Source: Octopus sinensis (lineage: Eukaryota). From it: a DNA stretch of 64,000 bases. Below, piece by piece: positions 8,936-63,540 of this stretch. Both the position numbers and the translations under genes were made by a program. The notes under the pieces were generated by a model that did no database searches, was not told the origin of the DNA, and saw nothing but the letters and a program-made list of their open reading frames with translations. The number at the start of each line of letters is the position of its first letter. Position 1 is the stretch's first letter. The stretch lies in NCBI RefSeq assembly GCF_006345805.1, contig NW_021833080.1:1-64000 (forward strand), read 5' to 3'.

Positions 8936-9223
8936 GAGCATATAGAATGTACAGAGAATATATCTAATAAGCGTGCACAAATCTCAAAAGCACCAACATT
9001 TTAAAATAAGGATTTGAAAGGAAACTAATTATGTCTATCACTAAATACACAAAATAGATCACTTAGGTCGATATGTGAGCTTCTCAGTTTCAAAGATTAA
9101 TATTTTCCCAAACATAACCAAATTTCCGGATTGTTGCAAGAGAGAGGTAAACTATACTTGATGCGTTTTCAATCGATAGGAAAGCTAATGAGTGTCCGAA
9201 AAGTATCTTCTGTTAATAAATAG

Positions 9224-9622
9224 ACGCGGGAGTGGTTGTGTGGTAAGTAGCTTGTTTACCGACCACATGGTTCCAGGTTCAGTCCCACTGCGTGGCACGT
9301 TGGGCAAGTGTCTTCTACTATAGCCTCGGGCCGACCAAAGCCTTGTGAGTGGATTTGGTAGACGGAAACTGAAAGAAGCCTGTCGTATATATGTGTATAT
9401 ATATATGTATGTATGTGTGTTTGTCCCCCTAGCATTGCTTGACAACCGATGCTGGTGTGTTTACGTCCCCGTAAGTTAGCGGTTCGGCAAAAGAGACCGA
9501 TAGAATAAGTACTGGGCTTGCAAAAGAATAAGTCCCGCGGTCGAGTTGCTCGAATAAAAGCGGTGCTTCAGCATGGCCGCAGTCAAATGACTGAAACAAG
9601 TAAAAGAGTAAAAGAGTAAAGA
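9224..9622 (+). mobile_element. SINE family A
   Basis: Homologous to 6832-7235. Confidence 0.9.
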
Positions 9623-9664: not shown

Positions 9665-9950
9665 CATGGCTTAGGGGTTAGAGCAGCGGACTCGCGGTCG
9701 ACGGATCGCGAGTTCGAATCACAGACCGGGTGATGTGTGTTTTTATGAGCGAAACACCTAAGCTCCACGCGGCTCCGGCAGAAGGTAATGACGAACTTCT
9801 GCGAGACTCTTTCGCCACAACTTTCCTCCTTCATCTTGCATTTTGCAGCTCACCTGCGACGGACCGGTGTCCCGTCCAGGTGGGGAAACAATACGCAAAG
9901 GAAATCGGGAGACCGACCCTATGAGACAGGCGTGGATCGAGAAGGAACAA
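9665..9950 (+). mobile_element. tRNA-derived SINE, family B variant
   Basis: B-like head GCAGCGGACTCGCGGTC..GTTCGAATC with a different 3' body; related minus-strand copies at 28130-28437 and 55600-55885. Confidence 0.8.
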
Positions 9951-9951
9951 A

Positions 9952-10260
9952 CAACTACTACTACTACTACAACTAATACTACCAGTACTACTTCTACTAC
10001 AACCACCACCACCACCACCATGACGACGACGACGATGACGACAATGACGACCACCAGCAGCAGCAGCACTACCACCACCACCACCACCACTACTACTACT
10101 ACTACTACTGCTACTACTGCTACTGCTGCTACTACTACTACTACTACTACTACCTCTACTACTACTACTACTACTATAATCGTCATCGTCATACTCATCA
10201 TTGTCGTCGTCGATGTCATCAGTAACACCATCGTCATTATAATTGCAATGTCACTTATTT
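9952..10260. repeat. Compound trinucleotide microsatellite (ACT/ACC/ACG/AGC)
   Basis: Direct reading. Confidence 0.95.
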
Positions 10261-10434
10261 TCAAGTTGTCCTTATCCTGTTCTTTCTACTCCTCCGTCTC
10301 CTCCGACCTCCACCTCCAGTCATCTCATCCTTCCTCGTTATCTATTCCTCTTCATCGTCACTCTTGTTATCGTGAACAACGTCTGCATCATCGTTGTAAC
10401 CATTATTGTCAAAGTAGACGTCCTGAACCGTTAC

Positions 10435-11340
10435 GGCGGCCCGGCAACATGCTTAGCCGTATTTCGTCTGCCGTTACGTTCTGAGTTCAAATTCCGCCGA
10501 GGTCGACTTTGCCTTTCATCCTTTCGGAGTCGATTAAATAATTACCAGTTACGCACTGGTGTCGATATAATATACTTAATCCGTTTGTCTGTCCTTGTTT
10601 GTCCTCTCTGTGTTTAGCCCTTTGTGGGTAGTAAAGAAATAGATATTTTGTCTGCCGCTACGTTCTGAGATCATATTCCGCCGAGGTCGACTTTGCCTTT
10701 CATCCTTTCGGAGTCGATTAAATAATTACCAGTTACGCACTGGGGTCGATATAATAGACTTAATCCGTTTGTCAGACCTTGTTTGTCCTCTCTGTGTTTA
10801 GCCCCTTGTGGATAGTAAAGAAATAGGTATTTTGTCTGCCGCTACGTTCTGAGTTCAAATTCCGCGAGGTCAACTTTGCCTTTCATACTTTCGTAGTCGA
10901 TTAAATAAGTACCAGTTACGCACTGGGGTCGATATAATCGACTTAATCCGTTTGTCTGCCCTTGTTTGTCCCTTGTTAGCCACTTTGGATGTAAGAAATG
11001 GTATTTTGTCTGCCTAATCTGAGTTCAATTCGCGAGGTCACTTTGCCTTTCATGTTCGGTCGATTAAATAGTACCAGTTACGCACGGGGTCGATATAATC
11101 GACTTAATCCGTTTTGTCTGCCCTTGTTTGTCCCCTCTGTGCGTAGCCACTTGTGGGCAGTAATGAAATGGGTCTTTTGTCTGTCTACGTGTTCTGAGTC
11201 CAAATTCCGCCGAGGTCGACTTTGCCTTTCATCCTTTCGGGGTCGATAAATTTAGTACCAGTTGCGTACTGGGGTCGATCTAATCTACTGAGCCCCTCTT
11301 CCAACATTTCGGGCCTTCTGCCTAGGGTAGAAAAGAATAT
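10435..11340 (+). mobile_element. Head-to-tail multimer (about 5 units) of Meta-domain-type SINE family C
   Basis: Repeating ~180-bp unit GTATTTCGTCTGCCG..GAGTTCAAATTCCGCCGAGGTCGACTTTGCCTTTCATCCTTTCGG..; central block resembles the MetaSINE domain (recalled). Confidence 0.85.
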
Positions 11341-12648: not shown

Positions 12649-13098
12649 AATAAATGAGAACAACAACAATAGTAGTAATAGAGTTTACTCGTATGAAAAC
12701 TGCCGCGGTAATTTGGGTGGTAGCGTTCTTGTTGGAGAGCTATTTAGCTTTCTATGAGAACTCGCACACGAGCATCAGCACAACCACCACCACCACCGCC
12801 ACCGCCACCGCCACCGCTACCGCCACCGCCACCACCAGCTGTCGCCGCCGCCGCCGTCACCTTCACTAGACTCAGCTATCACCGCCGCCACCACCACCAT
12901 CATCACCACCACAACCACAACCACCACCACTACCACTACTGCCACCACCACCACCACCACAATCATTACCATCATCGTCGTCATCATGATCATGACCATC
13001 ATGATTGTCATGATTATCATCCACATCACCATCACCATCATCACCACCACCATCATCATCATCATCACCATCACCATCATCATCATCACCACCATCAC

Positions 13099-13136
<38 letters not shown>

Positions 13137-13230
13137 CCATCACCATCACCATCTTCACCATCAGCGCCACTAGCATCGTAACTACCACAACCACCAAGAT
13201 TACTATTAGCACCATCACCGAAATTATTAC

Positions 13231-13262
<32 letters not shown>

Positions 13263-13585
13263 ACACCACCATCAAGAATACCACTACCATCACTACCACT
13301 ATGACTCCCACCACTGTTACGTATATCACCACCAGCATCACCGCAACCGCCACAACCACCTCCACCACGACCACCTCCAAAACCACCACCTCTAAGTACT
13401 TCCTCCCCACCAACACACTGTCAGAATCATCACCGACCCACCATCGTCACTACTACCCCAGCACCATCACCGAAAACAAATAACAACGAAGCTACTGCCT
13501 CCGCTACCACCACACCACCACCACCACCACCACCACCACCACCACCACCACCATCACCAAAAATACTACTACTACTACTACTAAC
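12580..13585. repeat. Compound trinucleotide tract (ACC/ATC/ACT)
   Basis: Direct reading; source of the poly-His/Ile/Met ORFs. Confidence 0.95.
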
Positions 13586-17587: not shown

Positions 17588-17766
17588 TTAGAGAGTATTA
17601 AATAATGCAATCTTCGGTAGACGCTTTCTGAGGAGAAAAACTCGCCATCCGCCAGCTGGAAGATGTTTTGTTAAAGATACAAAATTGACGATGTCCTTAT
17701 AATGACGGACAGAATGATTTGTAGTTTTTGTTCCGACTCTCAACGTTTTAAGAAGGAATTTTACCG

Positions 17767-18170
17767 AGGCGCAGGAGTGGCTGTGTGGTAAGTAGCTTGC
17801 TAACCAACCACATGGTTCCGGGTTCAGTCCCACTGCGTGGCATCTTGGGCAAGTGTCTTCTGCTATAGCCCCGGGCCGACCAATGCCTTGTGAGTGGATT
17901 TGGTAGACGGAAACTGAAAGAAGCCTGTCGTATATATGTATATATATATATGTATGTGTGTGTTTGTGTGTCCCCCTAGCATTGCTTGACAATCGATGCT
18001 GGTGTGTTTACGTCCCCGTCACTTAGCGGTTCGGCAAAAGAGACCGATAGAATAAGTAGTGGGCTTACAAAAAATAAGTCCCGGGGTCGATTTGCTCGAC
18101 TGAAGGCGGTGCTCCAGCATGGCTGCAGTCAAATGACTGAAACAAGTAAAAGAGTAAAGAGAGTAAAGAG
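17767..18170 (+). mobile_element. SINE family A
   Basis: Homologous to 6832-7235. Confidence 0.9.
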
Positions 18171-21277: not shown

Positions 21278-21444
21278 TAGGCGCAGGAGTGGCTGTGTGG
21301 TAAGTAGCTCGCTTACCAACCACATGGTTCCGGGTTCAGTCCCACTGCGTGGCATCTTGGGCAAGTGTCTTCTGCTATAGCCCCGGGCCGACCAATGCCT
21401 TGTGAGTGGATTTGGTAGACGGAAACTGAAAGAAGCCTGTCGTA

Positions 21445-21517
<73 letters not shown>

Positions 21518-21716
21518 TGTTTGTCCCCCTAGCATTGCTTGACAACCGATGCTGGTGTGTTTACATCCCCGTCACTTAGCGGTTCGGCAAAAGAGACCGA
21601 TAGAATAAGTACTGGGCTTACAAAGAATAAGTCCCGGGGTCGATTTGCTCGACTAAAGGCGGTGCTCCAGCATGGCCGCAGTCAAATGACTGAAACAAGT
21701 AAAAGAGTAAAGAGTA
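21278..21716 (+). mobile_element. SINE family A
   Basis: Homologous to 6832-7235. Confidence 0.9.
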
Positions 21717-24088: not shown

Positions 24089-24204
24089 AGAAGACCTGCT
24101 CAAAAACTTTTAACTGTCTGACAAGTAGCGATTGGATCTCTTTGCTATGAAATCAACTAACCCCTTTCCCGACTTGCTTACCTTGTGCCAAAAATTTTTT
24201 GAAA

Positions 24205-24254
24205 TCATCAACATCATCATCATCATCATCATCATCATCAACGTCATCATCATC

Positions 24255-24309
<55 letters not shown>

Positions 24310-24331
24310 CCATCATCATCATCACCATCAC

Positions 24332-24381
<50 letters not shown>

Positions 24382-24495
24382 CCTTCATCATCATCACCTT
24401 CATCATCATCATTGTCATCACCATCGTCATCATCATTATTATTATTATCATCATCATCATCATCATTATTATTATTGTTGTTGTTATTATTATTC
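24205..24495. repeat. (CAT)n/(ATT)n microsatellite
   Basis: Direct reading. Confidence 0.95.
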
Positions 24496-25427
24496 GAATG
24501 TGACTCAACCGGTTTGGCTGCCATTCAGCTTAACCTGCGTATTTACGGCAGTGGGTAGCTTGTTGTATTTGAGATGTCCTCAGGCACCTTCAGTCATATG
24601 CAGCAGCAGCAACAACAACAAGAACAACGCCAACAACACATAAGGAGCAGCAACCGAATGTACCGAACCGCTTACGATGAGTAAAAGTATCTGTTCTCCG
24701 ATTTCACTTACTTACAGATTGGAACGGGTAGCAGGAATTTTAAGGGTGCGATTTTGTAGACGATTTACTGTTGTTGGGTGCACTGCTCATCACTTAGTAC
24801 TTTCTCCGTTACCTTTTTTTTTCACAGAAAACCATTCATATTTGTTATATATATATATATATATATACTACACATTCATACTCACACAAAGAAACAAATA
24901 CACATTCACAAAGAAGCACGCACACACTCATATACACACACGCACACGCCCACACACATGCATACGCACACACAGAAACCCACCCAGCCATCCACCCACA
25001 CATGCACAGACACACTCTTTGCTGTTATTCTTGTGCCAAAAGAACATGGTGGTCGCTCTCATCTGTTCACAACGTTTTCTTTCTGTTTAAGGGAGTTTTC
25101 TTTCTAGATTTGTGGAAACGCGGAGAGATTTCTGACTAACAAATGTTTTATGTATCATCCTCTTCGACATCTTTACACGTCCTCCTTCCCCTCCTCTGTG
25201 GTGGCGAGCTAGCAGAATCGTTAGCATGTCGGACAAAATGTTTGGCGGCGTTTCGTCTGCCTTTACGTTCTCAGTTCAAATTCCGCCGAGCTCGACTTAG
25301 TCATTAATCCATTTGGAGGTCGATAAAATAAATACAAGTTAAGCACTAGGGTCGGTATAATCCCCCAATATTTCAGGCGTTATACCTATAGTATTATTAT
25401 AAATAATACTATATTTATGTACTATTT

Positions 25428-35489: not shown

Positions 35490-35905
35490 TACTCATTACT
35501 CTTTTACTTGTTTCAGTCATTTGACTGAGGCCATGCTGGAGCACGGCCTTTAGTCGAGCAAATCGACCCCGGGACTTATTCTTTGTAAGTCCAATACTTA
35601 TTCTATCGGTCTCTTTTGCCGAACCGCTAAGTGACGGGGACGTAAACACACCAACATCGGTTGTCAAGCAATGCTAGGGGGACAAACACAGACAGACAAA
35701 CATATACACACACACACATATATATATATATATACATATATACGACAGGCTTCTTTCAGTTTCCGTCTACCAAATCCACTCACAAGGCATTGGTCGGCCC
35801 GGGGCTATAGCAGAAGACACTTGCCCAAGGTGCCACGCAGTGGGACTGAACCCGGAACCATGTGGTTGGTTAGCAAGCTACTTACCACACAGCCACTCCT
35901 GCGCA
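35490..35905 (-). mobile_element. SINE family A
   Basis: Reverse complement of 6832-7235. Confidence 0.9.
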
Positions 35906-36550
35906 TCATTTAATTTTCAAAAATATTCCTTAAAATTTTTATTCTGTTTGAGAATCTGTTGTTAATATTAGTTTTAAATATGGGAATGTGGCCAACAATT
36001 AGAGGGGGGGTCATAGGTTGATTGGATCAACACTTAGGACTGAACTGGTACTTATTCTTTCGACTCCGAAAGAATGAAAATCAAAATTGACCCCGGCGGA
36101 TTTTGTATTCAAAACATAAAAACGGACGAAAAGTCGGTAAGCATTTTGTCCGGCGTGCTAAATATTCTTATTGCACGTCACCTTCGATTTCAAGTTTCAG
36201 AAGGCCAGCTATTTTATAGGAGAGGTGAGTCGATTACATTTTCCCCAGGACTTGACTGTTCTCTTTTTTATTTATCGGTCCTGAAAAGATGTTTACCTTT
36301 CCGGGTCGACGGAATTTGAATTCAGAAAGTACAACCGGAAGAAAAGCCGCTTAGCATTTTGTCCCCTGTGCTAACGGTTACTCTAATATTACTTTCAACT
36401 TTTGATACAAGACCAGCCATTTCGGTGGTGGAGATCCAATAAATGTTTATAGAATTTTTACTCTAACCGTCCTTACTTCTCTGAAGTTATCCTTAGCCTG
36501 GCAGTGACAATAACAATTTGTAACTGTGGATCAGGTTTATTTATTTATTA

Positions 36551-41715: not shown

Positions 41716-41925
41716 ATCTATCTATATCAAATAATAATTATAATAAGGATTATTACGAAGTAGCATTAGCATTACCTTTAATTTCTTTTTATACATGTTC
41801 AACTTCGACTAGACCTACACGTGTTTCCTCTGCATCAATTAGTAACTGTTTCAATAGCAACCTTACTACAATACCGGTGCAGTTTCTCAGATATCTGTAA
41901 ATTTATATTTTGTTTGATGACAGAT

Positions 41926-42298
41926 AGGCGAAGGAGTGGCTGTGTGGTAAGTAGCTTGCTAACCAACCACACGGTTGCGGGTTCAGTCCCACTGCGTGGC
42001 ATCTTGGGCAAGTGTCTTCTGCTATAGCCCCGGGCCGACCAATGCCTTGTGAGTGGATTTGGTAGACGGAAACTGAAAGAAGCCTGTCGTATATATGTAT
42101 ATATATGTATATGTGTGTGTGTTTTTGTGTGTCTGTGTTTGTCCCCCTAGCATTGCTTGACAACCGATGCTGGTGTGTTTACGTCCCCGTCACTTAGCGG
42201 TTCGGCAAAAAGAGACCGATAGAATAAGTACTAAAAGGTGGTGCTCCAGCATGGCCGCAGTCAAATGACTGAAACAAGTAAAAGAGTAAAAGAGTAGA
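41926..42298 (+). mobile_element. SINE family A
   Basis: Homologous to 6832-7235. Confidence 0.9.
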
Positions 42299-43934: not shown

Positions 43935-44335
43935 ATATGCTGGCTGTGTGGTAAGTAGCTTGTTTACCAACCACATGGTTCCGGTTCAGTCCCACTGTGT
44001 GGCACCTTGGGAAAGTGTCTTCTTCTATAGCCTAGGGGCCGACCAAAGCCTTGTGAGTGGATTTGGTAGACGGAAACTGAAAGAAGCCCGTCGTATATAT
44101 GTATATATATATGCGTGTGTGTGTTTGTGTGTCTGTGTTCGTCCCCCTAGCATTGCTTGACAACCGATGCTGGTGTGTTTATGTCCCCGTTACTTAGCGG
44201 TTCGGCAAAAGAGACGTAGAATAAGTACTGGGCTTACAGAAGAATAAGACCCGGGGTCGAGTTGCTCGATTAAAGGCGGTGCTCCAGCATGCCGCAGTCA
44301 AACGACGACTGAAACAAGTAAAATAGTAAAAGAGT
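43935..44335 (+). mobile_element. SINE family A
   Basis: Homologous to 6832-7235. Confidence 0.9.
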
Positions 44336-46963: not shown

Positions 46964-47344
46964 ATAGTAATAGATAGATATATAGACGAATGAAAAGTGA
47001 CGTTTTATGCGTGTGTGTGTTTGCGTGCGTGGGTGCGTGTGTGGCGTACGTGTGCGCGCGTTTGTGTGTGTGTGTGTGTATGTGTGTGTGTGTGTGTGTG
47101 TCTGCGTGTGTGTGTGTGTTTGTGTGTGTGTGGATCTGACAAACTAAATACACTGTACTATAAAATATTGTAGTTTTATTTTCGTTAGATTGTCAGAAAC
47201 TGCAGAAACAAAGCATTTTACTAGAGTTTGCCTGCATTTTCACGTCTCTGCCTGCCACGCACTCCCACTCCGCTTGTTGTTTTAGACTTGTTCTGCCAGC
47301 GTGACCTATCAGACACATATTGCGTTTTTATTATATGTAAGAAG

Positions 47345-48490
47345 TTGGCAAGCTGGCAGAAACGTTAGCACGCTCGGCGAAATGCGTAGCCGTATTTCGT
47401 CTGCCGTTACGTTCTGAGTTCAAATTCAGCCGAGGTCGACTTTGCCTTTCATCATTACGGTGTCGATTAAATAAGTACCAGTTACGCACTGAGGTCGATA
47501 TAATCGACTTAATCCGTTTGTCTGTCCTTGTTTGTCCTCTCTGTATTTTGCCCCTTGTGGGTAGTAAAGAAATAGGTATTTCGTGTGCTGCTAAGTTCTG
47601 AGTTCAAATTCCGCCGAGGTAGTATTTGCTTTTCATCCTTTCGACGTCGATAAATTAAGTACCAGTTGCGTAATTTCCCAAAAATTCGGGCTTTGTGCCT
47701 ATAATAGAAAAGATTATATGTAAGAAGGCGACGGGCAGGCAGAATCGTTAGCACGCCGGGCGAAATGCTTTGCGGTATTTCGTCTGCCGTTACGTTCTGA
47801 GTTTAAATTACGCCGAGATCGACGTGCCTTTAATCTTTTCGGGGTCGATTAAATAAGTATCAGTTACGCACTGGGGTCGATATAATCGACTTAATCCGTT
47901 TGTCTATCCTTGTTTGTCCTCTCTGTGTGTAGCCCCTTGTGGGTAGTAAAGAAATAAGTATTTCGTCTATCTTTACGTTCCGAGTTCACTTTGCCTTTCA
48001 TCCATCCGGGGTCGATAAATTAAGCATAGGGAACACTGGGGTCGATGTAATCGACTAGTCCCCTCTCCCCAAATTTCAAGGCATTGTGCCTTCAGTACAA
48101 AGGATTATATCTAAGAAGGCGGCGAGCGGGCAGAAACGTTAGCACGCCGGGCGAAATGCGTAGCTGTATTTCGTCTGCCGCTACGTTCTGAGTTCAAATT
48201 CCGCCGAAGTCGATTTTGCTTTTCATCCTTTCGGGGTCGATTAAGTAAGTACCAGTCACGCCCTGGGGTCGATATAATCGACTAATCCGTTTCTCAGTCC
48301 TTGTTTGTCCTCTGTGTGTTTAGCCCCTTGTGGGTAGTAGAGAAATAGGTATTTCATCTGTCTTCCGTTCTGAGTTCGACTTTGCGTTTCATCCTTTCGG
48401 GGTCGATAAATTAAGTACCAGTTGCTTACTTTGGTCGATCCAAACGACTGGCCCCCGCCCCCAAAGTTTCGGGCCTTGTGCTAGAGTAGA
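47345..48490 (+). mobile_element. Cluster of SINE family C multimers (three head-led blocks)
   Basis: Heads at about 47345, 47730 and 48120, each followed by two units. Confidence 0.88.
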
Positions 48491-49589
48491 ACAGTTTATA
48501 TGTACGATTTTATTACAAAATATATTTTTGTTGTCGATGGAGGTATTTCGATGTAACTTTCCTTCTTATTTTAATTTACCGCCTTATTGGTCCATTACAA
48601 GTCTCTAATGAGCTAGAATTGACATGTATATTTGTGTTACAATTATCTTACAATTTTAGCAACACCTCTGATAAATCTGCTTGATAACATACATTGATAT
48701 GCTATCTCAATTTGTATTATATGTATATAATTGTGCTTTAGTTAACCTGTTATCTATTATTATAGGCCGTACCTAGATATCTTACTTATATTTATACTTG
48801 TACATAAATGTCGTTCAATAACCACATTATTCCAATCTCTTACATGAAAATCGCTCACCTTTCTAGTATTTCTTGCATTTTTCATGCAATTTACGTCACT
48901 GTTTGTTCAGATTTTTGTTTTCATCGCAGCAATATCAAGTGCTGCAAAAGATATCTTATAGACGGACTTATTAAGTAAAGTGCAATGCAATTTTTATGTG
49001 CCTAAAATATATTACAAGCTTCTAAATGTTCGTATTATTTCAGAGTTTTTTTTTTCTAATATACTCCGTGCATCTACAAGAAAAAAAATCTTTTATTCTT
49101 TTACTCGTTTGAGTCATTTGGCAGCGATCATGCTGGAGCACCGCCTTTAGTCGGAGAATTCGGCCCCAGAATTTATCCGTTGTAAGCCTAATACTTATTT
49201 TATCGGTGTCTTTTGAAGAACTAAGTTACGGGGACGGAAACACACCAACATAGGTTGTCAAGCGATGGTGGAATCCAAACACAGACATATCCATATATAT
49301 ATATATATATATAATGAAGGGTGAAATTAATTAATTTGGAAAAATTATCAATTACACCAAGTAGTCTTCGGATGTAAAAGCCTCATTCGAGGAAAATTTA
49401 AGTAATACTAAGCAATAAGGGTTTAGCAACGAATTGCCTTACCAATACCGAATTTAGAAATAGCAGTCAAAGGGTTATAGCTATTTCTTTACTAAAAAGG
49501 GAGATCTCAGTAAAAACAGCATTTGGAAGCAGACACAACAGGTAAGAGAGAATGAATTGACTGCAATCTATCATACATTTTTTTAGTTA

Positions 49590-49693
49590 TCTACGGACGT
49601 ACGTTTCGAAATCAAGTTTTAGGAAAGCATAAGAATAAATATTAATATTAAATAATTCTATCTTACCGAAACTTCTTTTCTCTTCAGCGTAGA
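49590..49693 (-). ncRNA. Type I hammerhead ribozyme, array copy 1
   Basis: Reverse complement reads TCTACG CTGAAGA..GAAA CGTACG TC CGTAGA. Confidence 0.85.
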
Positions 49694-50183
49694 ATACTAT
49701 AATCATAAATGATTATATATTGAATTTTGAGATACCAGAAGGCACACAACTCAACTCAGTATCAGAGCGAGCTAGAATCCGCAACTGGTATCACCGAATT
49801 CAATTTGATGATGAAACGATTGCGTCAACATCCCCTTCCCACCCGCGTGTAGCCAAAACAAGATACTGTGGTCATCTACTGAGATAAAATATGGTTATCC
49901 GTAATAATGAAGGGTGAAATTAATTAATTTGGAAAAATTATCAATTACACCAAGTAGTCTTCGGCATGTAAGCCTCATTCGAGGAAAATTTAAGTAATAC
50001 TAAGCAATAAGGGTTAGCAACGAATTGCCTTACCACATACCGAATTTAGAAATAGCAGTCAAAGGGTTATAGCTATTTCTTCTACTAAAAAGGGAGATCT
50101 CAGTAAAAACAGCATTTGGAAGGCAGACACAAACAGGTAAGAGAGAATGAATTGACTGCAATCTATCATACATTTTTTAGTTA

Positions 50184-50290
50184 TCTACGGACGTACGTTT
50201 CGAAATCAAGTTTTTAGGAAAGCATAAGAATTAAATATTAAATATTAAATAATTCTATCTTACCGAAACTTCTTTTCTCTTCAGCGTAGA
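50184..50290 (-). ncRNA. Type I hammerhead ribozyme, array copy 2
   Basis: Core and stems intact. Confidence 0.85.
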
Positions 50291-50785
50291 ATACTATAAT
50301 CATAAATGATTATATATTGAATTTTGAGATACCAGAAGGCACCAACTCAACTCAGTATCAGAGCGAGCTAGAATCCGCAAATGGTATCACCGAATTCAAT
50401 TTGTGAATGAAACGATTGCGTCAACATCCCCTTCCCACCGCGTGTGTAGCCAAAACAAGATACTGTGGTCATCTACTGAGATAAAATATGGTTATCCGTA
50501 ATAATGAAGGGTGAAATTAATTAATTTGGAAAAATTATCAATTACACCAAGTAGTCTTCGGCATGTAAAAGCCTCATTCGAGGAGGAAAATTTAAGTAAT
50601 ACTAAGCAATAAGGGTTTAGCAACGAATTGCCTTACCACATACGAATTTAGAAATAGCAGTCAAAGGGTTATAGCTATTCTTCTACTAAAAAGGGAGATC
50701 TCAGTAAAAACAGCATTTGGAAGGCAGACACAAACAGGTAAGAGAGAATGAATTGACTGCAATCTATCATACATTTTTTTAGTTA

Positions 50786-50893
50786 TCTACGGACGACGTA
50801 CGTTTCGAAATCAAGTTTTTAGGAAAGCATAAGAATTAAATATTAAATATTAAATAATTCTATCTTACCGAAACTCTTTCTCTTCAGCGTAGA
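50786..50893 (-). ncRNA. Hammerhead, array copy 3 (3-nt GTC duplication at the cleavage site)
   Basis: Plus strand reads GGACGACGTACG instead of GGACGTACG. Confidence 0.7.
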
Positions 50894-51382
50894 ATACTAT
50901 AATCATAAATGATTATTATTGAATTTTGAGATACCAGAAGGCACCAACTCAACTCAGTATCAGAGCGAGCTAGAATCCGCAACTGGTATCCCGAATTCAA
51001 TTTGTGAATGAAACGATTGCGTCAACATCCCCTTCCACCCGCGTGTAGCCAAAACAAGATACTGTGGTCATCTACTGAGATAAAAATGGTTATCCGTAAT
51101 AATGAAGGGTGAAATTAATTAATTTGGAAAAATTATCAATTACACCAAGTAGTCTTCGGCATGTAAAAGCCTCATCGAGGAGGAAAATTTAAGTAATACT
51201 AAGCAATAAGGGTTTAGCAACGAATTGCCTTACCACATACCGAATTTAGAAATAGCAGTCAAAGGGTTATAGCTATTTCTTCTACTAAAAAGGGAGATCT
51301 CAGTAAAAACAGCATTTGGAAGGCAGACACAAACAGGTAAGAAGAATGAATTGACTGCAATCTATCATACATTTTTTAGTTA

Positions 51383-51489
51383 TCTACGGACGTACGTTTC
51401 GAAATCAAGTTTTTAGGAAAGCATAAGAATTAAATATTAAATATTAAATAATTCTATCTTACCGAAACTTCTTTTCTCTTCAGCGTAGA
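51383..51489 (-). ncRNA. Type I hammerhead ribozyme, array copy 4
   Basis: Core and stems intact. Confidence 0.85.
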
Positions 51490-51977
51490 ATACTATATCA
51501 TAAATGATTATATATTGATTTTGAGATACCAGAAGGCACCAACTCAACTCAGTATCAGAGCGAGCTAGAATCCGCAACTGGTATCACCGAATTCAATTTG
51601 TGAATGAAACGATTGCGTCAACATCCCCTTCCACCCGCGTGTAGCCAAAACAAGATACTGTGGTCATCTACTGAGATAAAATATGGTTATCCGTAATAAT
51701 GAAGGGTGAATTAATTAATTTGGAAAAATTATCAATTACACCAAGTAGTCTTCGGCATGTAAAAGCCTCATTCGAGGAAAATTTAAGTAATACTAAGCAA
51801 TAAGGGTTTAGCAACGAATTGCCTTACCACATACCGAATTTAGAAATAGCAGTCAAAGGGTATAGCTATTTCTTCTACTAAAAAGGGAGATCTCAGTAAA
51901 AACAGCATTTGGAAGGCAGACACAAACAGGTAAGAGAGAATGAATTGACTGCAATCTATCATACATTTTTTTAGTTA

Positions 51978-52080
51978 TCTACGGACGTACGTTTCGAAAT
52001 CAAGTTTTAGGAAAGCATAAGAATTAAATATTAATTAAATAATTCTATCTTACCGAAACTTCTTTTCTCTTCAGCGTTGA
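51978..52080 (-). ncRNA. Type I hammerhead ribozyme, array copy 5 (one stem I mismatch)
   Basis: Plus strand CAGCGTTGA instead of CAGCGTAGA. Confidence 0.8.
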
Positions 52081-52571
52081 ATACTATAATCATAAATGAT
52101 TATATATTGAATTTTGAGATACCAGAAGGCACCAACTCAACTCAGTATCAGAGCGAGCTAGAATCCGCAACTGGTATCACCGAATTCAATTTGTGAATGA
52201 AACGATTGCGTCAACATCCCCTTCCCACCCGCGTGTAGCCAAAACAAGATACTGTGGTCATCTACTGAGATAAAATATGGTTATCCGTAATAATGAAGGG
52301 TGAAATTAATTAATTTGGAAAAATTATCAATTACACCAAGTAGTCTTCGGCATGTAAAAGCCTCATTCGAGGAAAATTTAAGTAATACTAAGCAATAAGG
52401 GTTTAGCAACGAATTGCCTTACCACATACCGAATTTAGAAATAGCAGTCAAAGGGTTATAGCTATTCTTCTACTAAAAAGGGAGATCTCAGTAAAAACAG
52501 CATTTGGAAGGCAGACACAAACAGGTAAGAGAGAATGAATTGACTGCAATCTATCATACATTTTTTAGTTA

Positions 52572-52676
52572 TCTACGGACGTACGTTTCGAAATCAAGTT
52601 TTTAGGAAAGCATAAGAATTAAATATTAAATATTAAATAATTCTATTACCGAAACTTCTTTTCTCTTCAGCGTAGA
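52572..52676 (-). ncRNA. Type I hammerhead ribozyme, array copy 6
   Basis: Core intact; small deletion in distal stem II. Confidence 0.85.
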
Positions 52677-53696
52677 ATACTATAATCATAAATGATTATA
52701 TATTGAATTTTGAGATACCAGAAGGCACCAACTCAACTCAGTATCAGAGCGAGCTAGAATCCGCAACTGGTTCACCGAATTCAATTTGTGAATGAAACGA
52801 TTGCGTCAACATCCCCTTCCCACCCGCGTGTAGCCAAAACAGATACTGTGGTCATCTACTGAGATAAAATATGGTTATCCGTAATAATGAAGGGTGAAAT
52901 TAATTATTTGGAAAAATTATCAATTACACCAAGTAGTCTTCGGCATGTAAAAGCCTCATTCGAGGAAAATTTAAGTAATACTAAGCAATAAGGGTTTAGC
53001 AACGAATTGCCTTACCACATACCGAATTTAGAAATAGCAGTCAAAGGGTTATAGCTATTTCTTCTACTAAAAAGGGAGATCTCAGTAAAAACAGCATTTG
53101 GAAGGCAGACACAAACAGGTAAGAGAGAATGAATTGACTGCAATCTATCATACATTTTTTTAGTTATCTACGGACGTACGTTTCGAGATTTCGAAACGTA
53201 CGTCCGTAGATAACTAAAAAAATGTATGATAGATTGCAGTCAATTCATTCTCTCTTACCTGTTTGTGTCTGCCTTCCAAATGCTGTTTTTACTGAGATCT
53301 CCCTTTTTAGTAGAAGAAATAGCTATAACCCTTTGACTGCTATTTCTAAATTCGGTATGTGGTAAGGCAATTCGTTGCTAAACCCTTATTGCTTAGTATT
53401 ACTTAAATTTTCCTCGAATGAGGCTTTTACATGCCGAAGATACTTGGTGTAATTGATAATTTTTCCAAATTAATTAATTTCACCCTTCATTATTACGGAT
53501 AACCATATTTTATCTCAGTAGATGACCACAGTATTGTTGGCTACACGCGGGTGGGAAGGGGATGTTGACGCAATCGTTTCATTCACAAATTGAATTCGGT
53601 GTACCAGTTGCGGATTCTAGCTCGCCTGATACTGAGTTGAGTTGGTGCCTTCTGGTATCTCAAAATTCAATATATAATCATTTATGATTATAGTAT

Positions 53697-53803
53697 TCTA
53701 CGCTGAAGAGAAAAGAAGTTTCGGTAAGATAGAATTATTTAATATTTAATATTTAATTCTTATGCTTTCCTAAAAACTTGATTTCGAAACGTACGTCCGT
53801 AGA
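53697..53803 (+). ncRNA. Type I hammerhead ribozyme, inverted copy (predicted cut after C53797)
   Basis: Stem I TCTACG(53697-702)/CGTAGA(53798-803); CTGAAGA 53703-709; stem II GAAA/TTTC then AAGTTT/AAACTT and AGAATTA/TAATTCT; GAAA 53786-789; stem III ACG-TA-CGT; GUC site. Confidence 0.88.
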
Positions 53804-54288
53804 TAACTAAAAAAATGTATGATAGATTGCAGTCAATTCATCTCTCTTACCTGTTTGTGTCTGCCTTCCAAATGCTGTTTTTACTGAGATCTCCCTTTTT
53901 AGTAGAAGAAATAGCTATAACCCTTTGACTGCTATTTCTAAATTCGGTATGTGGTAAGGCAATTCGTTGCTAAACCCTTATGCTAGTATTACTTAAATTT
54001 TCCTCGAATGAGGCTTTTACATGCCGAAGACTACTTGGTGTAATTGATAATTTTTCAAATTAATTAATTTCACCCTTCATTATACGGATAACCATATTTT
54101 ATCTCAGTAGATGACCACAGTATCTTGTTTTGGCTACACGCGGTGGGAAGGGGATGTTGACGCAATCGTTTCATTCACAAATTGAATTCGGTGATACCAG
54201 TTGCGGATTCTAGCTCGCTCTGATACTGAGTGAGTTGGTGCCTCTGGTATCTCAAAATTCAATATATAATCATTTATGATTATAGTAT

Positions 54289-54395
54289 TCTACGCTGAAG
54301 AGAAAAGAAGTTTCGGTAAGATAGAATTATTTAATATTTAATATTTAATTCTTATGCTTTCCTAAAAACTTGATTTCGAAACGTACGTCCGTAGA
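54289..54395 (+). ncRNA. Type I hammerhead ribozyme, inverted copy (predicted cut after C54389)
   Basis: Same as 53697-53803. Confidence 0.88.
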
Positions 54396-54891
54396 TAACT
54401 AAAAAAATGTATGATAGATTGCAGTCAATTCATTCTCTCTTACCTGTTTGTGTCTGCCTTCCAAATGCTGTGTTTTTACTGAGATCCTCTTTTAGTAGAA
54501 GAAATAGCTATAACCCTTTGACTGCTATTTCTAAATTCGGTATGTGGTAAGGCAATTCGTTGCTAAACCCTTATTGCTTAGTATTACTTAAATTTTCCTC
54601 GAATGAGGCTTTTACATGCCGAAGAAGACTACTTGGTGTAATTGATAATTTTTCCAAATTAATTAATTTCACCTTCATTATTACGGATAACCATATTTTA
54701 TCTCAGTAGATGACCACAGTATCTTGTTTTGGCTACACGCGGGGTGGGGAAGGGGATGTTGACGCAATCGTTTCATTCACAATTGAATTCGGTGATACCA
54801 GTTGCGGATTCTAGCTCGCTCTGATACTGAGTTGAGTTGGTGCCTTCTGGTATCTCAAAATTCAATATATAATCATTTATGATTATAGTAT

Positions 54892-54998
54892 TCTACGCTG
54901 AAGAGAAAAGAAGTTTCGGTAAGATAGAATTATTTAATATTTAATATTTAATTCTTATGCTTTCCTAAAAACTTGATTTCGAAACGTACGTCCGTAGA
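54892..54998 (+). ncRNA. Type I hammerhead ribozyme, inverted copy (predicted cut after C54992)
   Basis: Same as 53697-53803. Confidence 0.88.
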
Positions 54999-55311
54999 TA
55001 ACTAAAAAAATGTATGATAGATTGCAGTCAATTCATTCTCTCTTACCTGTTTGTGTCTGCCTTCCAAATGCTGTTTTTACTGAGATCTCCCTTTTTAGTA
55101 GAAGAAATAGCTATAACCCTTTGACTGCTATTTCTAAATTCGGTATGTGGAAGGCAATTCGTTGCTAAACCCTTATTGCTTAGTATATATATATATATAT
55201 GGACTGAACCCCGAACCATGGGCACGTGCCTTCTACTATAACTTCCGGCAGACCAAAGCCTTGTGAGTGGATTGGTAGACGAAAACTGAAAGAAGCCCGT
55301 CGTATATGTGT

Positions 55312-56880: not shown

Positions 56881-57114
56881 ATATATATATCGACCTAGTA
56901 ACACAAAAAAATGTTTAAGGGCCTGTAGGATATAAGCAGATTACTGCAGACAAACAACATTGTTGTGTATGTCTATGCGTGTGTCTGCGTATACGTATGT
57001 GTGCGTGTGTGTTTGCGCGTGCGTGGGTCTGTCTTTGTCTGTCCCTCTGTTTGTGTGTCTATCCGTCTGTCTTTGTGTCTTATTATCTCCCTCAGACAGT
57101 GTTAAATCTAGCAA

Positions 57115-57515
57115 ATGATGATGTCGATGATGATGATGATAATAATGATGATGACGATGATAATGATAATAATGATGATGTTGATGATGATAATAATGAT
57201 GATGACGATGATGATGATAATAATGATGATGACGATGATAATGATAATAATGATGATGACGATGATGATAATGATGATGATAATGATGATGATGATAATA
57301 ATGATAATGATGATGATGACGATGATAATGATAATAATGATGATGATGATAATGATAATAATAATGATGATGACGATGATAATGATAATAATGATGATAA
57401 CGATGATAATGATAATAATGATGATGATGACGATGATGATGATAATAATGATGATGCCGATGATGATGATGATGATGATGATGAAGATAACAATTATAAT
57501 GATGATGGCGATGAA
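57115..57515. repeat. (GAT/AAT/GAC)n compound microsatellite
   Basis: Direct reading. Confidence 0.95.
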
Positions 57516-57679: not shown

Positions 57680-58070
57680 CTTTACTCTTTTCTCTTTTAC
57701 TTGTTTCAGTCATTTGACTGCGGCCATGCTGGAGCACCGCCTTTAGTCGAGCAAATCGACCCCGGGACTTATTCTTTGTAAGCCCAGTACTTATTCTATC
57801 GGTCTTTTTTGCCGAACCGCTAAGTGACGGGGACGTAAACACTCCAGCATCGGTTGTCAAGCAATGCTAGGGGGACAAACACAGACACACAAACACACAC
57901 ACATATATATATATACATATATACGACAGGCTTCTTTCAGTTTCCGTCTACCAAATCCACTCACAAGGCATTGGTCGGCCCGGGGCTATAGCAGAAGACA
58001 CTTGCCCAAGATGCCACGCAGTGGGACTGAACCCGGAACCATGTGGTTGTTTAGCAAGCTACTTACCACA
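57680..58070 (-). mobile_element. SINE family A
   Basis: Reverse complement of 6832-7235. Confidence 0.9.
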
Positions 58071-58377
58071 CACAAACAAACACAAGTATACATCTATACA
58101 CACACGTTTATAAGGGTAATGTTTATGCTGATGTTGTTGGTGATGATGTTGGTATCAATAACAATTATGTGCAGAACAATATCGATTGGTTCGATATGTA
58201 CCTGATCACAACAGAAGAAATCTTCAACAAGAAAAAAAATTCGCATCAATGGAGCGACATTTTCACAGACAGTTCCGAAGGATGAAATAAATTTCATTAC
58301 TTTCTCGAAGTATTTTGCGCTATATTTAAGAATTGCGTTGCTCCTTTTTTGGAATATATCTAGCATTTTCATCTGGG

Positions 58378-62011: not shown

Positions 62012-63540
62012 CTATCTATCTATCTATCTATCTTCTATCTATCTATCTATCTGTCTGTCTGTCTGTCTGTCTGTCTGCTTGTCTGTCTATTTATCTATCT
62101 GTTTGTCTCTCTGTCTGTCAGTTCCTTTGCTCCATGCAATACATATATTAACGACAACTTACCTAGGGATATATAGAAATAGTTCATCCTTCTGAGTTTT
62201 TAAAGAACATTTATAAATTCGTCCATTTTGTTTTGTCTGTGAGACTAAACGAGAATCGATAAATGAGTCAATGAATACCAAATCAAACAATTTGAAGATA
62301 ATGATTTGAACATTTATCCCATTTAATACTATATAAAGGAATAGAGGAGGATCAACAGATTTAGTAAAACCCACGAACAAAATGCTTTGTAGTATATTAT
62401 TTGTTGTTTAAAAATTTATCCCGAACAATTGTAAATGTTCTTCAAAATATAACTGAAGAAAATAATTTTCATTTTAGATAGTTCTTGAAACAGCGATAGT
62501 TATTGAACATTTTTGGAAATGGTTAAGTGATTTATATACTTCTGATGAGAACCCAATAACGTTCGAAATAAATCGAATAAGGTTAATTTTTATGCTACCG
62601 AGATCGATTTTGCCTTTTTTCCGTTCGGTGTCGATGAAATAAGTACTAGTTGAGCACTCGGTCGATAATGTCGCCTCCCACCAAAATTTCGGTCGTTTTG
62701 TTTTTTGCCTATTCGTTGTTTCTGCCTATTTTTGCCTAAGGATAATTATTCAACATTTGGAACAGGTATGGGCAACCATTTTCGAGGAGCGGGCTGTATG
62801 GAAAATGGCTCATCTCTGTGTTTAGCCCCTTGTGGGCAGTAGAGAAAAAGGTATTTCCTTTGCCGCTACATTCTGAGTTCAAATATCACCGAGATTGACG
62901 TTGTCTTTCATCCTGTCGGAGTCGATAAAATAAGTACCATTTGAACACTGGGGTCGATGTAATCGACTTATCCGCTCCCCCAAAATCGTAGCAAAATTTG
63001 TAACGATTATTATAACTACTAATTTTTTAAGATGATCTTGCAAAATTGGTTAAGTGCTGGTCAAAATACTTTGTACTGTTATGTTAAATTGCCTTTTAAA
63101 ATTTAACCGTCTTTCCTCCTTGGAGACGATAAAACCGAGCGAAATTCGGTATATGATCGACTGCATCCATTCTCTCTAAAATTTTGAAGTTTTGTTTCTA
63201 TGTTAAACGCGATTATTATTATTTGGCATAATATTCCAAAAATTCCAGAATCTTTGGTTTGGAACCGCACCCTCAGAAATTGTGACTTCTGCTAAATCAA
63301 TCATCAATTAAGATTCAGGAAGTTGACAAGAATTTCGTCTTGGGACGCTACTTAATTGCATTAAAATAAATTTCGATAGAAATGACTGTTTCTCAGTGGG
63401 AAACCGTCTCCTTATATATTAGGAATAAATGAGAAATTCTAAAGATCTCCTGCATACATACATACATGCATGCATAGATTTGTTTGTATGTGTGCGTGTG
63501 TGTGTATATATATATAGGCATACAAAATACATACACACAT

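What the first reader, a model, noticed from the sequence alone, without database searches (positions are those of the whole stretch)
49312..55186. ~596-bp tandem monomer with a complete hammerhead ribozyme in every copy: candidate cephalopod retrozyme / circRNA-producing element
Seen in the sequence: about 10 near-identical non-coding monomers. Nine carry both conserved hammerhead core strands (CUGAAGA and GAAA..UC). In the consensus the stems are correct: 6-bp stem I TCTACG/CGTAGA, a G-C-closed and unusually long AT-rich stem II (~75 nt), stem III ACG-TA-CGT and a GUC cleavage triplet. Two copies have a defect at stem I or the cut site. The monomer has further hairpins (GAAATAGC/GCTATTTC, GATACCAG/CTGGTATC, ATAATCA/TGATTAT). 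Established knowledge: type I hammerheads with a short palindromic stem III occur in tandem repeats (newt satellite 2, schistosome SM-alpha, metazoan non-LTR retrozymes, Penelope pLTRs), often cleave as dimers, and retrozymes give monomeric circular RNAs. Inference: read-through transcription would be cut every ~592-603 nt (e.g. 53797, 54389, 54992), releasing monomers that could circularise and be re-inserted by an autonomous retroelement. The monomer is longer than the metazoan non-LTR retrozymes I recall, and I do not recognise this family.
Basis: partly seen in the sequence, partly recalled or inferred. Interest (0 to 1): 0.92.

Follow-up and report, generated by a model that had tools for sequence, protein, structure and literature searches.

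The report
Octopus hammerhead-ribozyme repeat, two opposed arrays
A 5.9-kb block of about ten near-identical 600-bp non-coding repeats, each carrying a full hammerhead self-cleaving ribozyme motif, fits the known class of animal "retrozymes" that make small circular RNAs, and it is built as two head-to-head arrays inside a (TA)n microsatellite.

Summary
The repeat and the ribozyme motif are real. The region 49311-55186 holds 9.8 copies of a 600-bp, 34% GC, non-coding monomer. Nine copies have a complete type I hammerhead (HHR) core with stems I, II and III. Seven are flawless, one has a stem I mismatch and one has a 3-nt insert in stem III. A structural descriptor expects 0.007 such motifs per shuffled window. 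Rfam Hammerhead_1 aligns end to end but scores only 20.2 bits against a cut-off of 34, because stem II is 76 nt long.

There are 6.5 copies with the ribozyme on the minus strand (49311-53186) and 3.3 copies with it on the plus strand (53187-55186). They are joined head to head, and both outer ends sit in (TA)n.

The HHR-sense RNA folds far better than shuffles (z = -7.8) and better than the antisense strand. Copies differ almost only by 1-nt indels, which look like sequencing noise.

Best reading: a new octopod family of non-LTR retrozymes, probably laid down by target-primed, rolling-circle reverse transcription from both ends of a broken (TA)n site, as Penelope-like elements do. The 600-bp size lies within the published range. 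Cleavage, circles and mobility are untested. No relatives were found elsewhere.

The parts
49293..49310 (.). (AT)9 microsatellite at the left outer end. It is the internal microsatellite of a flanking SINE-like repeat and the presumed target site.
   Evidence: Sequence read. Other copies of the flanking repeat carry a (TA/TG)n run at this position.
49311..53186 (-). Left arm: 6 full monomers plus a 0.46 partial monomer, HHR-sense on the minus strand. Its 3' end (consensus position 290, ...CTTCATTAT) abuts (AT)n. Its 5' end is at consensus position 587.
53187..55186 (+). Right arm: 3 full monomers plus a 0.33 partial monomer, HHR-sense on the plus strand. Its 5' end is at consensus position 583 (GATTTCGAAACG...). 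Its 3' end (consensus position 195, ...CTTAGTAT) abuts (TA)n.
53167..53210 (.). Head-to-head junction: two truncated half-hammerheads facing each other (TCTACGGACGTACGTTTCGA | GATT | TCGAAACGTACGTCCGTAGA). The join is blunt with no microhomology and a 4-nt asymmetric spacer at 53187-53190. It lies in the basal helix of stem II, 14 and 18 nt upstream of the two cleavage sites.
   Evidence: (arms 52937-53186 and 53191-53440 are 100% complementary, 4 nt apart).
55187..55200 (.). (AT)7 microsatellite at the right outer end.
54289..54395 (+). Representative complete HHR. Stem I 5' strand 54289-54294; core CUGAAGA 54295-54301; stem II 54302-54377 (76 nt, G10.1-C11.1); GAAA 54378-54381; stem III palindrome ACGUACGU 54381-54388; C17 at 54389 (cut between 54389 and 54390); stem I 3' strand 54390-54395.
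   Evidence: Rfam Hammerhead_1 model positions 1-45, 20.2 bits. The MFE fold reproduces stems I and II. Descriptor hit. Coordinates checked.
53697..53803 (+). Complete HHR, cut after 53797.
54892..54998 (+). Complete HHR, cut after 54992.
52572..52676 (-). Complete HHR on the minus strand, cut between 52578 and 52577.
51978..52080 (-). HHR with an intact core but an A.A mismatch in stem I (TCAACG instead of TCTACG).
   Evidence: (513T>A). It fails the strict descriptor.
51383..51489 (-). Complete HHR on the minus strand.
50786..50893 (-). HHR with a 3-nt insert (GTC) in stem III. The insert turns the palindrome into a 3-bp stem with a 5-nt loop. It may be a sequencing error.
50184..50290 (-). 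Complete HHR on the minus strand.
49590..49693 (-). Complete HHR on the minus strand.

Best explanation
This is a young, non-coding, non-autonomous retroelement of the non-LTR retrozyme kind, in an octopod genome.

Shown by the sequence: each 600-nt unit encodes a type I hammerhead. It has a 6-bp stem I that continues beyond a 2x2 internal loop, and a canonical core (CUGAAGA / GAAA / GUC). Stem III is a 2-bp stem with a palindromic GUAC loop, which can instead pair with a second ribozyme as an 8-bp helix. Stem II is unusually long at 76 nt.

Inferred life cycle: transcripts in the HHR sense are cut after GUC every ~600 nt, probably more efficiently as dimers. The monomers carry 5'-OH and 2',3'-cyclic phosphate ends held together by stem I. 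A host RtcB-type tRNA ligase circularises them into a highly self-paired 600-nt circular RNA. A reverse transcriptase from an autonomous element, most likely a Penelope-like element, copies the circle round and round and produces tandem cDNA.

Inferred origin of this locus: both 3'-OH ends of a break in a (TA)n microsatellite primed such rolling-circle cDNAs at UAU|UAC sites of the RNA. One cDNA ran 6.5 turns and the other 3.3 turns. Both stopped at the foot of the long stem II helix, and the two 5' ends were joined bluntly. That would give two outward-facing arrays with their 3' ends in (TA)n.
For: HHR motif:
- All core positions and all three helices are present in 9 units.
- Chance expectation is 0.007 per shuffled window and 0 in 20,000 shuffled monomers.
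- Rfam Hammerhead_1 aligns over model positions 1-45.
- The unconstrained MFE fold of the region yields stems I and II with an open core.
- RNAcofold predicts a dimer with an 8-bp intermolecular helix III, at -57.8 kcal/mol against 2 x -22.7 kcal/mol. This is the arrangement reported for newt and other type I HHRs with a palindromic stem III (PMC3088659).

RNA-level design:
- The sense monomer folds at -172 kcal/mol (z = -7.8, 21 G.U pairs).
- The antisense strand folds at -131 kcal/mol (z = -3.6, 6 G.U pairs).
- Stem I closes the whole molecule.

Retrozyme features:
- Tandem units, GC 34%, and the longest ORF is 51 codons.
- At least 2 consecutive complete HHRs on each arm.
- Published retrozymes are 'highly self-paired' circular RNAs proposed to yield tandem cDNA from a primed circle (PMC7229834).

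Insertion architecture:
- Both outer ends lie in (TA)n, at different monomer phases, and both fall at TAT|TAC.
- The arms are head to head.
- Penelope-like element insertions are described as partial tandems with an adjacent inverted 5'-truncated copy and a bias toward (TA)n or other microsatellite targets (PMC8557442).

Youth and single origin:
- There are about 3 clean substitutions against about 70 indel positions in 5.9 kb.
- There are no other copies in the remaining 58 kb.
Against: - The Rfam score is below the curated cut-off (20.2 against 34 bits). The hit is lost when more sequence is searched.
- A 76-nt stem II is atypical. Stem II is usually a few base pairs, and lengthening it can lower activity (PMC3088659).
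- All copies are one lineage, so there is no covariation support.
- No homologue was found in any collection I could reach.
- There is no reverse transcriptase or Penelope-like ORF in the window.
- No transcription, cleavage or circle data exist here.
- No target-site duplication can be read in (TA)n.
- The junction has no microhomology, and a DNA-level origin is also possible.
Confidence: 0.68

Rival explanations
1. This is ordinary satellite DNA that happens to carry a hammerhead, like newt satellite 2 or the cave-cricket pDo500 satellite. The array grew by unequal crossing-over or replication slippage. A DNA-level fold-back at the adjacent 8-nt palindromes (TTTCGAAA, ACGTACGT) inverted part of it. 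The ribozyme may trim transcripts, but the element does not move through RNA.
For: - Tandem, homogeneous copies.
- The inversion point lies exactly in a stretch with two 8-nt palindromes and has the 4-nt spacer typical of fold-back inversions.
- Published work notes that satellites and retrozymes grade into each other.
Against: - This is a short isolated block of 9.8 copies in SINE-rich DNA. Both outer ends lie in (TA)n at different monomer phases. That pattern is expected for target-primed insertion and not for in-situ expansion.
- Strand-specific RNA structure argues for selection at the RNA level.
- The junction shows no microhomology.
Confidence: 0.15
2. The hammerhead motif is a relic or a look-alike that no longer cleaves, because the 76-nt stem II or missing loop-loop contacts prevent the active fold. 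The block would then be an inert repeat.
For: - Sub-threshold Rfam score.
- Atypical stem II length.
- No covariation data.
- The z-score of the HHR region on its own is only -1.96.
Against: - Every invariant core nucleotide, the G10.1-C11.1 pair and the A15.1-U16.1 pair are intact in nine copies.
- Stem II has an internal loop 4 bp from the core and stem I has one 6 bp from the core. By my own recollection of sTRSV and Schistosoma HHRs, this is the usual spacing of interacting loops in extended hammerheads (inference).
- The chance expectation for the motif is negligible.
Confidence: 0.15
3. The head-to-head join, and possibly the joining of two separate loci, is an assembly artefact such as a fold-back chimeric long read. 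The real locus or loci would then be simple one-way arrays.
For: - Copy differences are almost all 1-nt indels and are deletion-biased (56 deleted against about 15 inserted bases, about 3 substitutions). This is the signature of poorly polished long-read consensus.
- A near-perfect 2-kb palindrome with a 4-nt spacer is an unstable structure.
Against: - Each arm continues into its own distinct, non-mirrored flank.
- The join falls in the ribozyme core and palindrome region, not at a random monomer position. About 3% of monomer positions would qualify (inference).
- Inverted adjacent copies are a described hallmark of Penelope-like insertions.
Confidence: 0.12
4. The block is the terminal-repeat (pLTR) part of an autonomous Penelope-like element, not a separate non-autonomous family.
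For: - Penelope pLTRs carry type I HHRs, and retrozymes are phylogenetically close to pLTRs.
- The insertion architecture is the same.
Against: - There is no RT or GIY-YIG coding capacity anywhere in the 64 kb, and no stop-free stretch that looks like a real protein.
- Monomers follow each other directly with no internal body.
- Penelope HHRs are described as minimal variants, whereas this one is extended.
Confidence: 0.05

Closest known systems
Metazoan non-LTR retrozymes (Cervera & de la Pena 2020, PMC7229834; Li, Clavereau & Pollet 2026, bioRxiv 10.64898/2026.07.22.740005), including the mussel Mytilus galloprovincialis families
   Same: - Tandem non-coding repeats of low GC.
- One type I HHR per unit, with a 2-bp helix III capped by a palindromic tetraloop.
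- Highly self-paired monomer RNA.
- No LTR, PBS or PPT.
[quoted passage not shown]
   Different: - The monomer is 600 bp against 170-450 bp in the 2020 survey, although it lies inside the 51-972 bp range of the 2026 survey.
- Stem II is a 76-nt imperfect hairpin instead of a short stem-loop.
- The locus is two opposed arrays.
- No expression or cleavage data.
- I found no open-access report of a cephalopod family.
Penelope-like element insertions and their pLTR hammerheads (Cervera & de la Pena 2014; Craig et al. 2021, PMC8557442)
   Same: - Partial tandem organisation.
- An adjacent inverted 5'-truncated copy.
- A microsatellite target, (TA)n.
- A type I HHR with a palindromic helix III that can act as a dimer.
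   Different: - No RT or GIY-YIG ORF.
- The HHR is extended, not minimal.
- The repeat unit is the whole element.
Hammerhead-bearing satellites: newt satellite 2 (~330 bp), Schistosoma Sm-alpha (~335 bp), Dolichopoda pDo500 (~500 bp). These are recalled from my own knowledge and were not fetched.
   Same: Tandem monomers transcribed and cut to unit length by a type I HHR with a weak or palindromic helix III. Dimer-dependent cleavage is described for the newt ribozyme.
   Different: Those are large, high-copy families. Here only one 9.8-copy locus is visible, and genome-wide copy number is unknown.
Rfam RF00163 Hammerhead_1
   Same: Full-length alignment to model positions 1-45, with every conserved core position matched and the same loop-less 4+4 helix III consensus.
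   Different: The score is 20.2 bits against a gathering score of 34. The loss comes from 72 nt where the model has 10 in stem II.

Membership tests
Hammerhead ribozyme, type I | Invariant core: C3 U4 G5 A6 N7 G8 A9, G12 A13 A14, the A15.1-U16.1 pair, and H17 (not G) at the cut site | tested here: met
   CUGAAGA ... GAAA ... GUC is present in nine units. All are matched in the Rfam alignment.
Hammerhead ribozyme, type I | Three helices around the core with helix I open, and a G10.1-C11.1 closing pair | tested here: met
   Descriptor result: stem I 6 bp, stem II at least 4 bp and G-C closed, stem III 3-4 positions. The unconstrained MFE fold gives stems I and II.
Hammerhead ribozyme, type I | Score at or above the Rfam RF00163 gathering threshold (34 bits) | tested here: not met
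   20.2 bits, E = 0.01, in a 161-nt search. No hit in the larger searches.
Hammerhead ribozyme, type I | Short helix II whose loop contacts a loop in helix I (extended, fast-cleaving format) | tested here: inconclusive
   Helix II is 76 nt. Internal loops lie 4 bp (helix II) and 6 bp (helix I) from the core and could substitute for the usual loops. Tertiary contacts cannot be computed here.
Hammerhead ribozyme, type I | Base-pair covariation among homologues | tested here: inconclusive
   All copies are about 99% identical. No homologue was retrieved.
Hammerhead ribozyme, type I | Site-specific self-cleavage | not testable with these tools
   Needs in vitro transcription.
Non-LTR retrozyme | Tandem repeat with at least two consecutive units carrying complete type I HHRs, with HHR MFE below -5 kcal/mol (Li et al. 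2026) | tested here: met
   Three consecutive complete HHRs on the plus strand and runs of consecutive complete HHRs on the minus strand. MFE is -25.9 kcal/mol.
Non-LTR retrozyme | Monomer of a few hundred bp and low GC (<45-50%) | tested here: met
   600 bp and 34% GC. This is above the 150-450 bp range of PMC7229834 and inside the 51-972 bp range of the 2026 survey.
Non-LTR retrozyme | Non-coding; no LTR, PBS or PPT | tested here: met
   The longest stop-free stretch is 51 codons in any frame of a trimer. Units are directly tandem.
Non-LTR retrozyme | Highly self-paired monomer RNA | tested here: met
   66% of bases are paired, z = -7.8, and the effect is specific to the HHR strand.
Non-LTR retrozyme | Expressed as linear and circular monomer RNA | not testable with these tools
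   No transcriptome access. The ORF-based look-ups into public assemblies found nothing.
Non-LTR retrozyme | Co-occurrence with, or sequence relation to, Penelope-like elements | not testable with these tools
   No Repbase or Dfam library and no host genome are available. No Penelope-like element is present in the window. Only the insertion architecture matches.
Autonomous Penelope-like element | ORF with RT and a GIY-YIG endonuclease | tested here: not met
   None of the 130 stop-free stretches of at least 90 aa has the look of a real protein (composition and repeats, judged by eye; no domain search was run), and the array has none above 51 aa.

The most novel reading that the evidence does not exclude
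The locus may be a preserved 'footprint' of how animal retrozymes integrate. Two target-primed rolling-circle reverse transcriptions would have started from both ends of one broken (TA)n site on a 600-nt circular RNA. Both would have terminated at the same pause site, the foot of the ribozyme's 76-nt stem II, and been sealed head to head. This would be the first direct structural evidence for the circle-templated, Penelope-type integration that has so far only been proposed. The resulting roughly 2-kb perfect inverted repeat would also make long double-stranded RNA on read-through, a ready substrate for silencing or for the heavy A-to-I editing known in octopus.
Probability: 0.3. Interest if true: 0.6.

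Novelty: new member of a known kind. Interest (0 to 1): 0.42.

Why it matters
If confirmed, it adds cephalopods to the animals that carry hammerhead retrozymes. It also supplies a natural hammerhead with a very long helix II, which is useful for asking how much helix II can grow before loop-loop docking fails. The locus itself is informative. Its arms have 3' ends in (TA)n at arbitrary monomer phases, and their 5' ends are 4 nt apart at one structural site. That is what circle-templated, doubly primed reverse transcription predicts, and it can be tested simply by surveying the other loci of the family in the genome. Otherwise this is one more species-specific family of a class already known to be widespread in invertebrates.

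Tried and rejected
- Tandem Repeats Finder did not list the array because its longest period is 500. I used the repeat finder and BLAST instead.
- Rfam found nothing at gathering threshold or at E<=10 over 6.9 kb. Its only hits there were spurious miRNA matches caused by the palindromic junction. A 731-nt search also missed the HHR.
- No other ribozyme family was seen on either strand. The filters limit how much this negative result means.
- Exact-pattern scans for this HHR in JGI metagenome contigs and IMG/VR returned 0 hits.
- I tried to reach other assemblies through the three consensus-level ORFs of the monomer (47, 42 and 36 aa). None has an exact gene on record and the 47-aa ORF has no homologue. 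I take these ORFs to be chance.
- ARAGORN found no tRNA in the window, so the tRNA origin of the flanking SINE-like repeat rests only on my memory.
- No Pol III A or B box and no AATAAA were found in the monomer. There is one TATA-like heptamer per strand, which is not evidence of a promoter.
- I tested whether mirror-image copies either side of the junction share private variants, which would indicate a DNA-level duplication. They do not. The apparent shared sites at columns ~340 and ~413 are different deletions. This is uninformative if the variants are sequencing noise.
- A simple inversion of a once-uniform array does not reproduce the observed order of arms and flanks (reasoned).
- A relaxed-descriptor HHR-like hit at 62538-62583 is at chance level, 0.1 per window.

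Full report
OBSERVATION

The block 49311-55186 consists of copies of one monomer. Start-to-start spacings are 592-603 bp. Cutting at the predicted ribozyme site gives units of 592-603 nt and a 600-nt consensus. BLAST of that consensus finds full copies only inside the block and nothing else significant in the other 58 kb. Tandem Repeats Finder did not list the array only because its period limit is 500.

The pattern CTGANGAG-N60-90-CGAAACGNNCGTC occurs nine times, six on the minus strand and three on the plus strand. None was seen in 100 shuffles.

From 49311 to 53186 the ribozyme strand is the minus strand, with 6 full units and one 0.46 partial unit. From 53187 to 55186 it is the plus strand, with 3 full units and one 0.33 partial unit. 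The two blocks meet head to head. The innermost 250 nt of each arm are 100% complementary and 4 nt apart. The junction reads TCTACGGACGTACGTTTCGA|GATT|TCGAAACGTACGTCCGTAGA.

IS IT A HAMMERHEAD?

For the unit at 54289-54395:
- Stem I 5' strand: UCUACG.
- Core: CUGAAGA.
- Stem II: 76 nt, opening with G10.1 and closing with C11.1.
- GAAA, followed by ACGUACGU (A15.1...U16.1) and C17.
- Stem I 3' strand: CGUAGA.

Evidence for and against the call:
- Rfam gives no hit at gathering threshold over the window, none at E<=10 over 6.9 kb and none over 731 nt.
- On 161 nt, Hammerhead_1 (RF00163) aligns over its whole length (positions 1-45) with every conserved position matched. The score is 20.2 bits against a gathering score of 34, and E = 0.01 for that search. 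The alignment has 72 nt where the model has 10, so I infer that the shortfall is the insertion penalty.
- My own type I descriptor requires stem I of at least 5 bp, stem II of at least 4 bp, stem III of at least 3 positions and a uridine followed by a non-G cut-site nucleotide. It finds eight units in the array and none elsewhere.
- Shuffled 64-kb windows give 0.007 hits on average with that descriptor, and 20,000 shuffled monomers give none.
- Unconstrained folding of 146 nt returns stem I (6 bp, a 2x2 internal loop, then 4 more pairs) and stem II (4 bp, a 2x2 internal loop, 6 bp, then further pairs), with the core left open.
- Stem III as a hairpin is only 2 bp plus a GUAC loop. PMC7229834 describes this form for invertebrate retrozyme HHRs.
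- Two copies co-fold with an 8-bp intermolecular helix III and gain about 12 kcal/mol. This is the dimer mode described for newt and many type I HHRs.

My verdict is that the motif is a genuine hammerhead by sequence and secondary structure. It has an atypically long helix II. Activity is unproven.

THE MONOMER AS AN RNA
- The consensus has no coding capacity. The longest stop-free stretch is 51 codons.
- GC content is 34%.
- The HHR-sense strand folds at -172 kcal/mol against -123 +/- 6 for shuffles (z about -7.8), with stem I closing the whole molecule.
- The antisense strand reaches only -131 kcal/mol (z = -3.6). It has 6 G.U pairs against 21 in the sense strand.
- This strand asymmetry is what selection on an RNA of ribozyme polarity would produce. 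It matches the 'highly self-paired circRNAs' of published retrozymes.

COPY DIFFERENCES

Against the consensus, the copies show 56 deleted bases, about 15 inserted bases and only about 3 clean substitutions in 5.9 kb. Two thirds of the deletions lie in runs of at least 2 identical bases, against half of all consensus positions. That ratio is the reverse of real divergence and looks like long-read consensus noise. The true copies are probably virtually identical, so the array is very young or was made in one event. The two 'defective' ribozymes may therefore also be errors.

ENDS, FLANKS AND HOST
- In HHR sense, both arms end at TAT|TAC sites of the monomer. The left arm ends at consensus position 290 and the right arm at position 195. 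Both run straight into (AT)n...CTTCATTAT(AT)9TGGA... and ...CTTAGTAT(AT)7GGA....
- The 5' ends of the arms are at consensus positions 587 and 583. These lie inside the basal helix of stem II, 14 and 18 nt upstream of the cleavage site. The join shows no microhomology.
- The flanks are two different copies of a SINE-like repeat that carries an internal microsatellite and occurs at least ten times in the window.
- The left flank copy is cut at its microsatellite. The right flank copy lacks its head, and its first 21 nt (55201-55221) are inverted relative to intact copies.
- A translated artefact of that repeat hits only Octopus vulgaris and O. bimaculoides predicted proteins, so the host is an octopod.
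- There is no RT or endonuclease ORF in the window.

MECHANISM (INFERRED)

Published work proposes the following cycle for non-LTR retrozymes. Tandem transcripts self-cleave. Monomers are circularised by RtcB. [quoted passage not shown]

Penelope-like insertions are described as partial tandems, often with an inverted 5'-truncated copy alongside, and with a bias toward microsatellites such as (TA)n. A 2026 preprint relates vertebrate retrozymes to Penelope terminal repeats and reports consensus lengths of 51-972 bp.

The present locus fits a doubly primed version of that scheme. Both 3'-OH ends of a break in the self-complementary (TA)n would anneal at UAU/UA sites of the RNA. Each would prime a multi-turn cDNA, which explains the arbitrary and different 3' phases, the 6.5 and 3.3 turns, and the identical copies. 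Both would stop at the same strong structure, and the two ends would be joined. That the two 5' ends fall within 4 nt of each other would happen by chance in about 1.5% of cases (my estimate: 9 of 600 positions). This points to a preferred stop site or to a palindrome-driven DNA event. I cannot tell which.

One consequence follows for expression. Sense transcripts of the two arms diverge from the centre. A transcript entering from outside is antisense on the near arm and sense on the far arm, and it would fold back into about 2 kb of double-stranded RNA.

RIVALS
- Satellite DNA expanded and inverted at the DNA level. The two adjacent 8-nt palindromes TTTCGAAA and ACGTACGT sit at the junction, and a 4-nt spacer is typical of fold-back events.
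- An inactive, decayed ribozyme.
- An assembly artefact at the junction. This is made thinkable by the noisy consensus but is opposed by the distinct flanks and the non-random position of the join.
- A fragment of an autonomous Penelope-like element, which the absence of any ORF opposes.

COMPARISON AND NOVELTY

By the published operational definition and the descriptive features, the block qualifies as a non-LTR retrozyme.
- Mollusc retrozymes are already known in mussels, with repeats of 350-390 bp.
- I found no open-access paper describing hammerheads or retrozymes in cephalopods. The only co-mentions are a Penelope survey, a twister ribozyme screen, and a paper on non-autonomous LTR retrotransposons that holds each of the words octopus, hammerhead and retrozyme only once or twice.
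- The 600-bp size is not outside the known range.
- The long helix II and the head-to-head organisation are variant features.

I rate it a new member of a known kind. It is of moderate interest, mainly for the integration footprint.

LIMITS

No homologous sequence could be retrieved. There is therefore no covariation test, no copy-number estimate and no expression evidence. All functional steps are inferred.

Noticed in passing
window 55201-55221: The first 21 nt of the right-flank SINE-like copy (GGACTGAACCCCGAACCATGG) are inverted relative to at least 8 intact copies in the window, and about 18 nt that normally follow are missing. This is a micro-rearrangement directly at the array/(TA)n boundary. 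It could be a scar of the insertion or of break repair.
   Followed up: partly
window 49286-49316 and 55180-55205: Read in ribozyme sense, both outer junctions have the same form: monomer ...TAT, then (AT)n, then TGGA. On the plus strand the flanks are therefore short inverted repeats, TCCA(TA)n ... (TA)nTGGA. The 4-nt match may be chance.
   Followed up: partly
window 52937-53440: The two innermost units have no indel in their first ~244 consensus columns, while every other unit has 1-5 there (roughly P = 0.01). Either the consensus is polished better next to the unique junction, or the palindrome arms are homogenised near the centre.
   Followed up: partly
window 6780-7230, 9188-9615, 17591-18158, 21278-21711, 35496-35962, 41838-42293, 44004-44333, 57686-58202 and others: At least ten copies, in both orientations, of a ~350-400-bp SINE-like repeat with an internal (TA/TG)n microsatellite. 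Its translated artefacts match Octopus predicted proteins, so annotated 'hypothetical proteins' in those genomes include repeat-derived ORFs.
   Followed up: partly
window 47330-48415: A 391-bp unit repeated 2.8 times (80% matches), containing a different tRNA-like or SINE-like sequence (GTTCAAATTCCGCCGAGGTCGA...). ARAGORN calls no tRNA.
   Followed up: no
window 62538-62583 (+): A minimal hammerhead-like string, ACTT CTGATGA GAAC...GTTC GAAA TA...TA A GGTT. It was found only with relaxed rules (stem I 4 bp, stem III 2 bp, AUA site). The expectation is 0.1 per shuffled window, so it is probably chance.
   Followed up: partly
window 57114-57514; also 9761-10481, 12748-13480, 24113-24640: GAT/AAT-rich 9/27/30-bp minisatellite and several long trinucleotide-type tracts. 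They produce long low-complexity pseudo-ORFs on both strands.
   Followed up: no
window 53143-53234: Rfam sub-threshold 'mir-1277' and 'MIR6224' hits on both strands are artefacts of the perfect palindrome at the inversion junction. They are not miRNA genes.
   Followed up: yes
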